This document shows positions 18,242 to 22,149 of a DNA stretch of 64,000 nt, in pieces. The stretch is from Dimorphilus gyrociliatus. Taxonomy: Eukaryota; Animalia; Annelida. Under the pieces are notes generated by a model. The model did not search any database, had not been told where the DNA came from, and saw nothing but the letters and a program-made list of their open reading frames with translations. A program made the translations under genes and the position numbers. Each line of letters starts with the position of its first letter. Positions within the stretch are counted from its first letter, which is position 1. Where the stretch lies: positions 1,131,988 through 1,195,987 of the forward strand of contig CAJFCJ010000005.1 of assembly GCA_904063045.1 (NCBI GenBank), given 5' to 3'.

Positions 18242-20043
18242 ATGATCAATCGAATATCGTCGAAAGAAAACATTCCATGCGGAAATGACAAACCTCAAGC
18301 CGAAGTTCCAGAGAAAAGATTCAAGTCTGACTCTGGAAACGACGTTCCTCGAACCTTTAAAAATTTGAAGAAGGATAAGATCTATAAAAGAGGAAATTTC
18401 CTTGGAAAAGGAGGATTTGCGAGATGCTATGAAGCTACGCCAGTTCTGAACGGTCAAGTGTCGGCCCAGACTTTAGCTATTAAAGTAGTTCGCTTAGATA
18501 GATTGGCAAAGAAATTTCATCGGCAAAAAATGTATCAAGAAATTGAAATTCATAGCAAACTATCCCATCCAAATATTATTGGTTTTTATGAGAGTTTCAG
18601 TGATTCTCTTAATGTCTACATTGTACTAGAGTTGTGTAAAAGAAGAAGTTTAATGGAATTACAAAAAAGAAGGATAACAGTAACAGAGCCTGAGACTCGC
18701 TACTTCTCTTACCAAATTGCTCAGGGTTTGACCTATTTGCACGGACAAGGTATAATTCACCGAGATTTAAAATTGGGTAATATTCTTTTAAACGAAAATT
18801 TGGAAGTGAAGATTGGCGACTTTGGTCTTGCTACTCATAGTTGTCCTGGTCAAATGAGAAAGTCTCTTTGCGGAACACCAAATTATATTGCTCCTGAAAT
18901 TTTAAATCGTCAGGGTCATGACTTTAAAGTTGATTCGTGGTCCCTTGGTTGTGTTATTTATACCCTCCTTTTCGGTAAACCACCGTTCGAGAGATCGTCT
19001 TTAAAGGAAACTTATGAAAGTATTCAAGATCATAGATACTCCTTTCCCGATCGTCCTCAAGTTGGAGGGAATACTCGACGATTAATTAATCAACTCCTTT
19101 TAATGGATCCTTTACAAAGACTAGATATAAATGGCGTCCTGTGTCATACATTTTATACTTCAGGCTATCATCCCTCTTCTCTTCCCGACTCGTGCCTAAC
19201 TATTGAACCAAGGTTCGATCAAATCCAGTCTGAAGACGTTAAACTGGCGGGAAATATCTATTCGAAAACGATTGATTACCTGTCAGAGTTATTTGTTTTA
19301 TTAAATAAAGCAAAGAAGAGTCCAGTTCTTGAGGGTACCTGCGAAGAATTACAAAGTCCTGAAGATGCTCCAATATTTTGGCTGGCAAAATGGGTTGATT
19401 ACACTGACAAGTATGGATTTGGGGCAATGCTTTGTGATGGAAGTGTCTGTATTAAATTTAATGATAGCACCAGGTTAATAACAACTCGGAATTGCCGAAA
19501 TTTGCAATATGTAGACGCAAATAACAAGGAAGAGCTGTACACGATTAATAATTTTCCTCAGAAACTTAATAAGAAAGTGGTACTAGCAAAATATTTTAAA
19601 CGTTATATGGAATTTAACTTGAAGTCATCAGGTCCTAGGCGGGAAAACTCTGAAGCTAGTCAATTGTCAAGATTACCTTCGGTCAAGATGTGGTTTCGCA
19701 CACGGCGAACAACAGTATTCTACCTTAGCAATCACACATTTCAAGCAAATTTTAATGAAACACACGATAAGGTTAACGACTATATCTTCTTTAGTGCAGA
19801 TAACTAACAATAGCTCTTAACTATCTTTAGGTTATTCTCTGTCCTCTTCTGCAGTCTATCACTATAATAGATCAAGCAAATCTCGCAGAAACCTATAAAC
19901 TAAGTACAATCATTGACAATGGTTGCTGTACAAGAGTTTTGGAGCTTATTCGACACTGCGTGCCTCTCTTGGAACAATTTCTGAATATGAAGTCAAGATC
20001 AAGTATTAAGAGCGCCAAAAGTGTTTCAGTTCAAAGTACTTGA
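18242..20043 (+). CDS. PLK1: Polo-like kinase 1 (exons 18242-19771, 19831-20043)
   Basis: Kinase GKGGFARC, HRDLKLGN, DFGLA, LCGTPNYIAPE. Polo boxes WLAKWVDYTDKYGFG and WFRT..QANFNETHDK|VILCP. Confidence 0.95.
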
Positions 20044-20158
20044 GTTTAAAAATTTTCTTTTATTTATTCCCAACAAATATCTTTATACGAATATAAATAA
20101 ATTTATTATAATGTTGACATGATGTTAAAAATCCGCGCGAAATAGACAGACTGTGACA

Positions 20159-20184
20159 TCACGTGAGTACAAAGGTCATGTGAC
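20159..20184 (+). promoter_or_regulatory. Two CLEAR/M-box-like E-boxes (TCACGTGA 20159-20166; GTCATGTGAC 20175-20184) upstream of the lysosomal glycosidase
   Basis: Direct motif matches to TFEB/MITF-family sites 20-45 bp before the ATG at 20203. Confidence 0.6.
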
Positions 20185-20202
20185 ACAACAAATGAACTAA
20201 AT

Positions 20203-22149
20203 ATGAATTTGATATTCTATTTTGGTATTTTTGCATCATTTCTTGGCCTCCGAGCAGTTTTTGGCTTAGATAACGGCTTGGCTAGAACACCGCCAATGGG
20301 GTGGATATCATGGGAGAGATTTCGCTGCAATATAGACTGTACTGACGATCCTAACAACTGCATCAGCGAAAATCTTTACATGGAAATGGCTGATGTCTTA
20401 TCGACTGAAGGATACAGCAAAGTTGGCTATGAATATGTTAACATAGACGATTGCTGGTTGGAGAAAAAACGTGATGACGACGGTCGACTTGTTGCTGATC
20501 GTAAACGATTCCCTAGAGGAATTCGCTTTTTGGCTGATTATATGCATTCAAGACAATTAAAGTTAGGTATATATGAGGACTTTGGAGTGAAAACTTGTGC
20601 TGGTTATCCTGGTTCGGAATACTTCTTGCAAATGGACGCGCAAACATTTGCCGATTGGAAAGTGGATATGCTCAAATTAGACGGTTGCAATTCTCTACCA
20701 CAACAGATGGATGATGGTAATTAATCTTACGTCTTCAAATTTTCCTTTCTTTTTTAAAACTTTTAACATAGGCTATCCTCCAATTAACTTGTTTCTGAAT
20801 AAAACAAAAAGACCAATTTTATTATCGGTCGAATATCCTTTCTATCAGCTAGCTGTTCTAACAAAGGTATTCTGATGATTGTTTTGATTATTTTGATTTA
20901 TAGCCTACCCTGCCATGGCGTTTTGGCTGAACAGGACGGAAAGACCAATTTTATATTCGTGCAGTTGGCCAGCTTATCAAGAGAGTATTGTGGTATGCCG
21001 AACATAAAGAAAACTCCGCTATTGTCCTTTCAAAGTCATTTACAATTCCCTTTCGATTATTTAAGCAAAAGTTAATTTACTGATAAGCTTCCAATTATTA
21101 ACTGTTTTTACACAGCCAAACTATCCATTGCTAATTAGAAAGGCGAATTTGGCACGAAATTTCTTTGACATAGACGACAGCTGGGATAGTGTCAAATCAA
21201 TTATAGATTATTATGCTAGTGATATTTACAATGCTTCCAAATATGCTCAACCTGGTTTTTTTAATGACCCTGATCAGGTTTGAAAATTATTAAAGTATTT
21301 AAAAACGAAAAAAGAGAAAAGGGAATGAAAGTGATTGGGACAATCAGAGTTTTTTTACTCTACCTTTTCAAACTAATGAATACTTAACAGCCAAACTATA
21401 AAAGAATAGCAAAGTATTGCAACATCTGGAGGAATTATAATGATGTTGCTGATTCCTGGAGAAGTATTCTTAGCATTATAGAATTTTATGGCAAAAACAA
21501 GGGAAACTTTTCTCAAATTGCAAAACCAGGCTCATTCAATGATCCCGATATGGTAAACACACAAGCGTTTCAGATTTCCTAGTTTCTCTTTTTTCCTAGA
21601 AAAGATTGAATTTTAAAAGTCTATCTCTTTTTCTGATTTCAGCTCATTCTGGGAAATTTTGGCTTGAGTTATGATCAAGAAAGAGTACAAATGGCTATGT
21701 GGTGTATAATGGCATCACCACTTTTTATCTCGGCAGATTTAAGAAAAATTCGAGCATCGTCAAAAGAACTACTTCTAAACAAATATGCAATTAGCATAAA
21801 TCAGGATCCTTTGGGAATCCAAGGAACTTTAGTAGAAAAGGTTCAAAGTTGTAAAAAGTATAGAATCAGAAATAAAATGTTGATTTTCCAGAGAGGAGAT
21901 ATTCAAATCTGGCAAAAGGAACTGCAAACAAAAGGAAGTTTCGCTTTCGTATACTTAAAAACGGGAGACGATGGTATTCCATCCCGTGTTTCTTTTAAAA
22001 TGTCCAAGATGGGAGCGTTAGAAGACGTGCTTTATATGGTTTACGAAGTATTTGAAAATAAGTTTATAGGCCTTTGGAAAGGAAGTGAAAGTTTTGAAGC
22101 AGTTGTGAACCCAACTGGTGTATTTTTCGGGAAAGCATTTCCTGCTTAA
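20203..22149 (+). CDS. NAGA/GLA: GH27 lysosomal alpha-galactosidase / alpha-N-acetylgalactosaminidase with two mutually exclusive exon pairs (exon 1 20203-20716; A or B; C or D; final part 21643-22149 with a probable in-frame intron 21841-21891)
   Basis: Signal peptide, then [18 protein letters not shown], nucleophile LKLDGC, NDPD(M/Q)|LILGNFGL and [19 protein letters not shown]. Confidence 0.95.
20772..20866 (+). other. Alternative exon A of GH27 gene: (G)[31 protein letters not shown]
   Basis: AG acceptor 20770-20771, GT donor 20867, 95 nt, phase 1 to 0, open frame, paralogous to exon B. Confidence 0.85.
20904..20992 (+). other. Alternative exon B of GH27 gene: (A)[29 protein letters not shown]
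   Basis: AG acceptor 20902-20903, GT donor 20993, 89 nt, phase 1 to 0, canonical NAGA-type SCSWPAY. Confidence 0.9.
21116..21277 (+). other. Alternative exon C of GH27 gene: [23 protein letters not shown]...PGFFNDPDQ
   Basis: CAG acceptor, GT donor 21278, 162 nt, phase 0 to 0, open frame, acid/base Asp retained. Confidence 0.85.
21391..21552 (+). other. Alternative exon D of GH27 gene: [23 protein letters not shown]...PGSFNDPDM
   Basis: CAG acceptor, GT donor 21553, 162 nt (same length as C), phase 0 to 0. Confidence 0.9.

What the first reader, a model, noticed from the sequence alone, without database searches (positions are those of the whole stretch)
21010..21595. Bidirectional competing RNA stems that could mechanically couple the two exon choices
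Seen: an element in the C-D intron (21307-21353) is complementary to two partners. (1) The B-C intron: AAAACTC 21010-16 with GAGTTTT 21347-53; ATTGTCC 21021-27 with GGACAAT 21338-44; GTCATTT 21035-41 with AAGTGAT 21329-35 (G-U pairs); ATTCCCTTT 21045-53 with AAAGGGAAT 21318-26. This stem loops out exon C and leaves about 17+37 nt of unpaired intron between the B donor and D acceptor, close to the usual intron size here. (2) The D-E intron: a perfect 13-bp GAAAAAAGAGAAA 21307-19 with TTTCTCTTTTTTC 21583-95, extended by AGGGAAT 21320-26 with ATTTCCT 21574-80 and GAAA 21327-30 with TTTC 21568-71. This stem loops out exon D. The two stems share 21318-21330, so they exclude each other. Established: docking/selector competition drives mutually exclusive splicing in Drosophila Dscam1 and 14-3-3zeta. 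Inference: A-to-C splicing removes arm 1 with the lariat, freeing the dock to pair downstream and skip D (A-C), while using B keeps arm 1, which bridges B to D (B-D). This would couple two separate exon clusters with one RNA switch.
Basis: partly seen in the sequence, partly recalled or inferred. Interest (0 to 1): 0.9.

Follow-up and report, generated by a model that had tools for sequence, protein, structure and literature searches.

The report
Competing RNA stems around swappable exons
One short piece of an intron in a small marine worm's sugar-trimming enzyme gene can pair with neighbouring introns on either side, folding away one or the other of two alternative exons; the pairings are real and beat chance, but nothing shows that they also link this choice to a second exon choice upstream.

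Summary
Every quoted arm sits at its stated coordinates.

**The gene.** It is a GH27 alpha-galactosidase/alpha-N-acetylgalactosaminidase gene. It has two adjacent pairs of homologous exons: A/B (95 and 89 nt) and C/D (162 nt each).

**The pairings.**
- The three strongest intron-to-intron complementarities in the gene all land on one element of the C-D intron, about 21302-21357.
- Its partners are the B-C intron (stem 1; 0/500 and 0/120 shuffles as good), the D-E intron (stem 2; 1/120 in a 40-nt window test, but no better than shuffles when whole introns are compared) and, newly seen, the 37-nt A-B intron (0/120).
- Stems 1 and 2 are predicted to exclude each other and to be about equally stable (ensemble energies -136.3 and -136.9 kcal/mol).

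**RNA evidence.** One transcriptome shows B->D and C->E junctions, each skipping a nearer acceptor. It shows no B->C or C->D junction. Only the B-C and C-D introns, which carry stem 1's arms, are retained. Exon A is not seen.

**Reading.** This is most likely a docking-site type switch for C versus D, like human ATE1 or fly srp. The proposed A-C/B-D coupling is untested, its logic is incomplete, and the RNA data partly contradict it. No relatives were found, so covariation could not be tested.

The parts
20203..20716 (+). Exon 1 of the GH27 gene (ATG at 20203; ends one base into a codon)
   Evidence: Sequence. Joint 20716->20904 in RNA contigs.
20772..20866 (+). Exon A (95 nt). It carries the alpha-Gal-type pocket motif VEYPFY and has no Cys.
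   Evidence: Translation. 43% identical to B. Depth 0 in run X3.
20867..20903 (+). A-B intron, only 37 nt. Positions 20873-20899 are complementary to the central element at 21323-21349 (30 pairs, 8 of them G-U).
   Evidence: -24.2, z -5.1, 0/500. (0/120, family-wise 5/120). Sense -23.2 against antisense -7.2. Predicted probability about 0 when arm 1 is present.
20904..20992 (+). Exon B (89 nt). It carries the NAGA-type motif CSWPAY, with Cys.
   Evidence: Joints exon 1->B and B->D.
21007..21091 (+). Arm 1 in the B-C intron (core 21010-21053). It pairs with 21282-21356.
21116..21277 (+). Exon C (162 nt), homologous to D. It has Ala where D has the Cys that aligns with human GLA C223.
   Evidence: In RNA it is seen only continuous with the retained B-C intron. 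Its donor joins E.
21302..21357 (+). Central (docking-type) element of the C-D intron. 21318-21353 pairs with arm 1, 21307-21332 with arm 2 and 21323-21349 with the A-B intron.
   Evidence: Forcing it unpaired costs about 22 kcal/mol of ensemble energy.
21391..21552 (+). Exon D (162 nt), with Cys in YCNIWRN
   Evidence: Joints B->D and D->E.
21565..21595 (+). Arm 2 in the D-E intron: a pyrimidine run followed by CCTAG (a decoy-like acceptor). It pairs with 21307-21332 (26 bp in the MFE).
   Evidence: (I8).
21643..22149 (+). Exon E (last coding exon, stop at 22147-22149)

Best explanation
A purine-rich element of about 50 nt in the intron between the homologous exons C and D acts as a docking site with competing partners.

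- **Stem 1.** Pairing with the B-C intron closes a hairpin over exon C. This brings the B donor next to the D acceptor, about 50 nt of free intron apart, and holds the C acceptor and C donor at the far end of the helix. B->D is favoured; B->C and C->D are disfavoured.
- **Stem 2.** Pairing with the D-E intron instead closes a loop over exon D and brings the C donor near the E acceptor, giving C->E.
- The two conformers overlap at 21318-21332 and are about equally stable, so only one of C and D is kept.
- Stem 1 can form first during transcription.

This is the ATE1/srp/Dscam kind of structure-driven mutually exclusive splicing.

**Shown:** the complementarity, its excess over shuffles, the predicted exclusivity, the two long-range junctions, and the selective retention of the two introns that carry stem 1's arms.

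**Inferred:** that the stems form in vivo and cause those outcomes.
For: **Arms and statistics.**
- The arms are verified in the sequence.
- Stem 1 beats shuffles (0/500; 0/120 and family-wise 0/120) and same-geometry placements on real sequence (2/292).
- Stem 2 beats shuffles as a compact helix (1/120).
- Both arms are the best non-self partners in 64 kb.
- All top three intron-to-intron complementarities converge on one element.

**Folding.**
- The B->D intron folded alone has stem 1 in both the MFE and the centroid structure.
- With the D-E intron added, stem 2 has P 0.55-0.61 and stem 1 P about 0.36.
- Forced-conformer ensemble energies are -136.3 and -136.9 kcal/mol.

**RNA contigs of run X3.**
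- B->D skips a C acceptor 123 nt away for one 398 nt away.
- C->E skips the D acceptor 113 nt away.
- No B->C or C->D joint is seen.
- The B-C and C-D introns are retained (depths 391 and 172), while the stretch from exon 1 to B (intron, exon A, intron; 20717-20872) and the D-E intron have depth 0.
- The depths add up: 391 is about 214 + 172.

**Other.**
- C and D are both 162 nt, so the reading frame cannot enforce exclusivity and some other mechanism is needed.
- By eye, the C acceptor has a better pyrimidine tract than the D acceptor.
- Both arm-carrying introns are about twice the species' median of 66 nt in a compacted genome (PMC7854359).
Against: - No conservation or covariation test was possible. 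The nearest relatives found are about 50% identical in protein and carry single exons.
- Stem 2 is no better than shuffles at whole-intron level.
- Family-wise support weakens when exons are included.
- In longer folding contexts, stem 1 falls to P 0.02-0.04.
- The whole B->D intron does not fold unusually well (z -1.0).
- The RNA evidence is one run of assembled contigs. Contigs drop rare variants, and their depths are rough.
- Retention could simply reflect long, slowly spliced introns in a species tuned to short ones.
- After C->E splicing the central element is gone, yet the B-C intron is still retained. The stems do not explain this.
Confidence: 0.45

Rival explanations
1. The complementarity has no function. 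A purine-rich intron happens to lie among T-rich introns. The RNA pattern arises because exon C is poorly used in this tissue and the 398-nt B->D intron is spliced slowly.
For: - Whole-intron C-D:D-E energy equals that of shuffles.
- Shuffles involving the C-D intron are already the most stable, which is a composition effect.
- Family-wise values are weak once exons are included.
- The B->D intron has an overall z of only -1.0.
- Intron retention rises with intron size in this species.
- No conservation data exist.
Against: - Stem 1 uses mixed-sequence segments, not only purine:pyrimidine runs, and beats both shuffles and real-sequence backgrounds.
- The three best pairings converge on one 50-nt element.
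- The B donor skips a nearer acceptor that looks competent.
- The 90-nt D-E intron is not retained at all.
Confidence: 0.25
2. Only stem 1 matters. A long hairpin over exon C locks both flanking introns, so B can only reach D and the C donor can only reach E. Stem 2 is an incidental purine:pyrimidine match.
For: - Stem 1 alone accounts for the absence of B->C and C->D, for retention of exactly the two arm-carrying introns, and for both B->D and C->E.
- Stem 1 is the statistically strongest pairing.
- It forms first during transcription and dominates the fold of the B->D intron alone.
- Stem 2 is weak at whole-intron level.
Against: - Stem 2 is in the MFE in every context that includes the D-E intron.
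- It is the best partner of the purine run in 64 kb.
- It is significant as a compact helix (1/120).
Confidence: 0.2
3. One reading: the same switch couples the two clusters, so that A goes with C and B goes with D.
For: - A and C both lack the cysteines of a disulfide that B and D keep. Exon D's Cys aligns with human GLA C223; its partner C202 is from established knowledge. Matched pairs therefore make structural sense.
- B->D is seen and B->C is not.
- With arm 1 removed, stem 2 has P 0.87-1.0.
Against: - Exon A is unseen, so A->C is untested.
- The model does not say why A picks C while arm 1 is still present.
- C->E is as frequent as B->D in B-containing RNA.
- The A-B intron pairs with the same element, which by loop-out logic would favour A->D.
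Confidence: 0.12

Closest known systems
Human ATE1 exons 7a/7b: intronic elements R1 and R4 compete for R3 (PMC7797038)
   Same: - A two-exon homologous cluster.
- One intronic element between the exons has two mutually exclusive partners.
- The isoform ratio is tied to the difference in pairing energies.
- Loss of pairing gives double inclusion.
   Different: - In ATE1, R1 and R4 lie just upstream of each exon and overlap the acceptors. Here the partners lie upstream of C and downstream of D, so each stem loops out a whole exon.
- ATE1 is conserved across vertebrates and proven by mutation. Here there is neither conservation nor mutational evidence.
- Everything here fits in about 600 nt.
Drosophila srp exon 4.1/4.2 and Dscam exon 4/9 bidirectional pairings (PMC4691838); duplication model of Ivanov and Pervouchine (PMC6071210)
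   Same: - Upstream and downstream pairings around two tandem exons.
- Splice sites are brought close together, and the outcome depends on pairing strength.
- The arrangement is the one expected after tandem exon duplication.
   Different: - In srp the two stems do not share a site; a pseudoknot keeps them apart. Here they overlap directly by about 13-15 nt.
- I found no significant direct similarity between the flanking introns, so an origin by duplication is not shown.
Downstream-docking-site clusters (14-3-3zeta, Mhc, MRP1) and Dscam1 exon 6 (as summarised in PMC6071210)
   Same: Selector-like sequences lie downstream of each of A and B. Both are complementary to one docking site upstream of a later exon (D).
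   Different: - Another alternative exon (C) sits inside the loop.
- The pairing with the A-B intron relies on 8 G-U pairs and has about zero predicted probability when arm 1 is present.

Membership tests
Docking-site/selector (competing RNA structure) mutually exclusive splicing | Tandem homologous exons of which only one is kept | tested here: inconclusive
   C and D are 46% identical and both 162 nt. B->D and C->E joints are seen and no C->D joint. However, C appears only with the retained B-C intron, and assembled contigs cannot show that something is absent.
Docking-site/selector (competing RNA structure) mutually exclusive splicing | One intronic element is complementary to two or more alternative partners, and the pairings exclude each other | tested here: met
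   The pairings overlap at 21318-21332. The pair probabilities add to about 1. The forced conformers have ensemble energies of -136.3 and -136.9 kcal/mol.
Docking-site/selector (competing RNA structure) mutually exclusive splicing | Complementarity beyond chance | tested here: met
   Stem 1: 0/500, 0/120, 2/292. Stem 2: 1/120 but z 0.06 at whole-intron level. Weaker when exons are included.
Docking-site/selector (competing RNA structure) mutually exclusive splicing | Conservation or compensatory substitutions in orthologous introns | not testable with these tools
   No close relative was found. The best protein identity is about 50%. Two metagenome scans were blank. The related loci L001-L006 have single exons.
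Docking-site/selector (competing RNA structure) mutually exclusive splicing | Disruptive and compensatory mutations change and then restore exon choice | not testable with these tools
   Needs a minigene or an in-vivo experiment.
Coupled (coordinated) choices between two exon clusters | A-C and B-D are found on the same molecules, and A-D and B-C are depleted | tested here: inconclusive
   B->D is present and B->C is absent. Exon A has depth 0 in run X3. No other RNA run was offered.
Steric or reading-frame enforcement of mutual exclusion (A/B pair) | The intron between the exons is too short to splice, and exon lengths are not multiples of three | tested here: met
   The A-B intron is 37 nt against a median of 66 nt. 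A is 95 nt and B is 89 nt. That 37 nt is below the minimum spliceable length is an inference.
U2/U12 spliceosome incompatibility | A minor-type donor (RTATCCTT) and branch site on one of the competing introns | tested here: not met
   The donors read GTATTCTG (A), GTATGCCG (B) and GTTTGAAA (C). None fits the minor-type consensus.
Exon circularisation driven by an inverted repeat | A back-splice joint from the C donor to the C acceptor | tested here: inconclusive
   No backward joint is listed, but assembled contigs rarely keep such joints.

The most novel reading that the evidence does not exclude
A single docking element shared by two adjacent mutually exclusive exon pairs coordinates them. 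One 2-kb gene would then make two enzymes from matched exon pairs: A-C, alpha-galactosidase-like and without the disulfide, and B-D, alpha-N-acetylgalactosaminidase-like and with it. This would be an RNA-structure mechanism for coordination between alternative splicing choices. Three literature searches here did not turn up a case like this.
Probability: 0.13. Interest if true: 0.85.

Novelty: new member of a known kind. Interest (0 to 1): 0.55.

Why it matters
If the stems work, this is a naturally miniature example of structure-driven mutually exclusive splicing in a spiralian. All elements lie within about 900 nt, and the whole gene within 2 kb. It sits in a gene where the swapped exons carry the two residues that decide between galactose and N-acetylgalactosamine (PMC5645117) and the two cysteines of one disulfide.

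Its size makes it an easy minigene for asking how two neighbouring splicing choices are kept in step. That question is general and has few tractable models.

If the stems do nothing, the gene is still an unusual pair of exon duplications, and this finding adds little to it.

Tried and rejected
- **Covariation.**
  - I searched for relatives with exon E and exon C.
  - I fetched six loci.
  - All are distant and carry single A/B-type and C/D-type exons.
  - Two metagenome scans were blank.
- **Expression of exon A.** The second run search returned only DNA-like runs.
- **Transposon or MITE origin of the arms.** There are no other copies in the window.
- **Duplication origin of the selectors.** There is no significant direct similarity between flanking introns.
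- **Known RNA family.** The only hit is a sub-threshold mir-87 match on the minus strand (E 0.11), read as chance.
- **U12/U2 incompatibility.** Rejected from the donor sequences.
- **DNA-level inverted repeat versus RNA-level pairing.**
  - Stem 1 is equally stable on both strands at full length (-39.0 and -39.9).
  - Its core favours the sense strand (-35.5 and -30.6).
  - Only the A-B pairing is strongly sense-specific (-23.2 and -7.2).
- **Inner extension of stem 1.** It adds little energy, so I did not count it as strong evidence.
Full report
**What is there**

The stretch lies in a GH27 gene on the + strand. The gene begins with exon 1 (20203-20716), followed by two adjacent pairs of homologous exons, and ends with exon E (21643-22149).

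| Exon | Coordinates | Length |
|---|---|---|
| A | 20772-20866 | 95 nt |
| B | 20904-20992 | 89 nt |
| C | 21116-21277 | 162 nt |
| D | 21391-21552 | 162 nt |

- A and B are 43% identical in protein. C and D are 46% identical.
- The A-B intron is only 37 nt, and neither A nor B is a multiple of three. That pair can therefore be kept exclusive by steric hindrance and by reading frame.
- C and D are both in frame and 113 nt apart, so their exclusivity needs another mechanism.
I did not verify this independently. It fits the base composition, the short introns and the run labels. That species has a median intron of 66 nt, and its intron retention rises with intron size (PMC7854359).

**Check of the observation**

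The repeat finder also returned the perfect 13-bp pair on its own (I8).

*Stem 1 (B-C intron with C-D intron)*
- Whole-intron duplex energy is -39.0 kcal/mol; dinucleotide shuffles give -23.8 +/- 4.1 (0/500).
- In 40-nt windows it scores -27.5, against -15.4 +/- 2.3 for shuffles (0/120). No shuffle of all five introns gave any pair as good.
- With the same geometry slid over AT-rich parts of the window, 2 of 292 placements reach -39.
- RNAduplex extends it to 59 pairs (21007-21091: 21282-21356). The core already gives about -35, so the extension is weak.

*Stem 2 (C-D intron with D-E intron)*
- At whole-intron level it is no better than shuffles (z 0.06), because a purine-rich intron faces a pyrimidine-rich one.
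- As a compact helix it scores -25.0, against -17.0 +/- 2.7 for shuffles (1/120).
- The D-E arm is the best non-self partner of the purine run among 8528 windows on both strands of the 64-kb window.

*Caveat.* When exons are added to the scan, the family-wise values weaken to 4/48 for stem 1 and 19/48 for stem 2.

**A third partner**

The 37-nt A-B intron is also complementary to the same element (20873-20899 with 21323-21349; 30 pairs, 8 of them G-U).
- Energy is -24.2 kcal/mol, z -5.1, 0/500. In the window scan it is 0/120, family-wise 5/120.
- It is strongly specific to the sense strand: -23.2 against -7.2 for the antisense.
- Its predicted probability is about zero while arm 1 is present.

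So the three best intron-to-intron complementarities of the gene all converge on about 21302-21357. Forcing that element to stay unpaired costs about 22 kcal/mol of ensemble energy.

**Competition between the stems**

| Context folded | Stem 1 | Stem 2 |
|---|---|---|
| B->D intron alone | in MFE and centroid | arm 2 not included |
| B donor to E acceptor | P about 0.36 | P 0.55-0.61, 26 bp in the MFE |
| Either stem forced | -136.3 kcal/mol | -136.9 kcal/mol |
| Arm 1 removed | arm removed | P 0.87-1.0 |
| Longer upstream context | P 0.02-0.04 | P about 0.8 (0.81-0.85) |

Stem 1 is what can form before the D-E intron is transcribed. The fall in the longest contexts shows how fragile such predictions are.

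**RNA evidence**

Only one run of the organism was usable (X3, assembled contigs). It is RNA: it holds GT..AG joints, and both the stretch from exon 1 to B (20717-20872) and the D-E intron have depth 0.

| Feature in run X3 | Depth |
|---|---|
| Joint exon 1->B | 246 |
| Joint B->D | 189 |
| Joint C->E | 214 |
| Joint D->E | 482 |
| Unbranched contig 20963-21277 (end of B, whole B-C intron, exon C) | 391 |
| Contig 21248-21419 (C-D intron retained) | 172 |
| Exon A | 0 |

- No B->C, C->D, A->C or A->D joint appears.
- The flows add up: 391 is about 214 + 172.
- Roughly a third of the molecules are B-D-E. A third retain the B-C intron but have joined C to E. A third retain both introns.
- The B donor passes over an acceptor 123 nt away for one 398 nt away. 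By eye, the nearer acceptor has the better pyrimidine tract. The C donor passes over the D acceptor 113 nt away.
- In each case the skipped exon is the one enclosed by a predicted stem.
- The only retained introns are the two that carry stem 1's arms.

This fits a helix that holds the B donor beside the D acceptor and puts the C splice sites at its far end.

Limits of this evidence:
- The same junctions are expected from any mechanism of mutual exclusion.
- Contigs drop rare variants, and their depths are rough.
- Long introns are retained more often in this species anyway.
- Retention of the B-C intron introduces a stop codon after four codons, so two thirds of these molecules are unproductive.

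**The coupling idea**

The structural motive is sound.
- B has CSWPAY and D has YCNIWRN. The D cysteine aligns with human GLA C223.
- A has VEYPFY and C has KANLARN, so both lack the cysteines.
- In the pocket, A has Glu at the first specificity position, as GLA does, and Phe where GLA has Leu; B has the NAGA residues Ser and Ala. Those two positions switch substrate preference in the human enzymes (PMC5645117).

The proposed mechanism has gaps.
- Arm 1 is still present in an A-selected pre-mRNA until the A->C or A->D step, so it cannot decide that step.
- In B-containing RNA, D-skipping is as common as B->D, so keeping arm 1 does not enforce D.
- The A-B intron pairing would, on loop-out logic, favour A->D.
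- An earlier follow-up of this scan on the same DNA says matched pairs are used.

**Comparison with relatives**
- The best protein matches to exon E are about 50% identical.
- Loci from metagenomes carry a single A-type exon with SCEYALY and a single C-type exon with CNLARN, cysteines kept (L003-L006). Or they carry single B/D-type exons (L001, L002).
- The four-exon arrangement was therefore not found elsewhere, and no orthologous introns exist for a covariation test.
- Two metagenome scans were blank.
- The flanking introns show no significant direct similarity to each other, so origin of the arms by duplication (PMC6071210) is not shown.
- The arms are not repeated elsewhere in the window, and no Rfam family fits.

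**Comparison with known systems**

For the C/D pair the architecture is that of human ATE1 (R1 and R4 compete for R3; PMC7797038) and of the bidirectional pairings of fly srp and Dscam exons 4 and 9 (PMC4691838). The A-B and B-C partners, together with one docking site upstream of a later exon, resemble the downstream-docking clusters 14-3-3zeta, Mhc and MRP1 (PMC6071210). What would be new is one docking element serving two adjacent clusters.

**Verdict**
Chance complementarity (0.25) and a stem-1-only lock (0.20) are serious rivals.
- The coupling is unproven (about 0.12-0.13).
- Interest is moderate. It is a compact and testable system, of a known kind, without conservation or mutational support.

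Noticed in passing
window 20867-20903 with 21323-21349 and 21378-21383: The 37-nt A-B intron is complementary to the same C-D intron element (z about -5) and depends heavily on G-U pairs (sense -23.2, antisense -7.2). Its donor GTATTC can also pair with GAATAC, just upstream of the D acceptor.
   Followed up: partly
window 20993-21115: In run X3 the B-C intron stays in the RNA even in molecules that have already joined C to E. It brings a stop codon four codons after exon B. No B->C joint was seen although the C acceptor looks competent. Unexplained.
   Followed up: partly
window 20772-20992: Exon A has Glu at the first pocket position, as alpha-galactosidase does, and Phe where that enzyme has Leu; exon B has the alpha-N-acetylgalactosaminidase residues Ser and Ala. 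Swapping A and B should change substrate preference. This is already the subject of another finding of this scan.
   Followed up: partly
L003:575-1455, L004, L005, L006; L001:5213-5913: Metagenome contigs from other animals have GH27 genes with one A-type exon (SCEYALY) and one C-type exon (CNLARN), both keeping the cysteines, or with one B-type and one D-type exon. The four-exon interleaved layout was not found outside this genome.
   Followed up: partly
window 20736-20750 with 21137-21151; 20820-20859 with 21128-21167: The pyrimidine tract upstream of exon A, and exon A itself, are each somewhat complementary to the 5' part of exon C (z -2.8 and -2.5). Neither is significant family-wise.
   Followed up: no
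window 21574-21599: Arm 2 is a pyrimidine run ending in CCTAG in the middle of the D-E intron. It looks like a decoy acceptor but is not used in run X3.
   Followed up: no
window 20633-20777: A coral metatranscriptome (X2) holds a 151-nt contig that covers the end of exon 1 and the unspliced following intron, with one mismatch and one inserted T. The animal or a very close relative is therefore present in a coral sample.
   Followed up: no
window 21223-21304, minus strand: A weak mir-87 match (21 bits against a gathering score of 49, E 0.11). Probably chance.
   Followed up: no
window 19300-20203: The X3 contig that carries exon 1 and exon B is 1501 nt long. It runs about 1.3 kb upstream of 20600, past the ATG at 20203 and towards the ORF 18242-19807. 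This points to a long 5' leader or read-through from the upstream gene.
   Followed up: no
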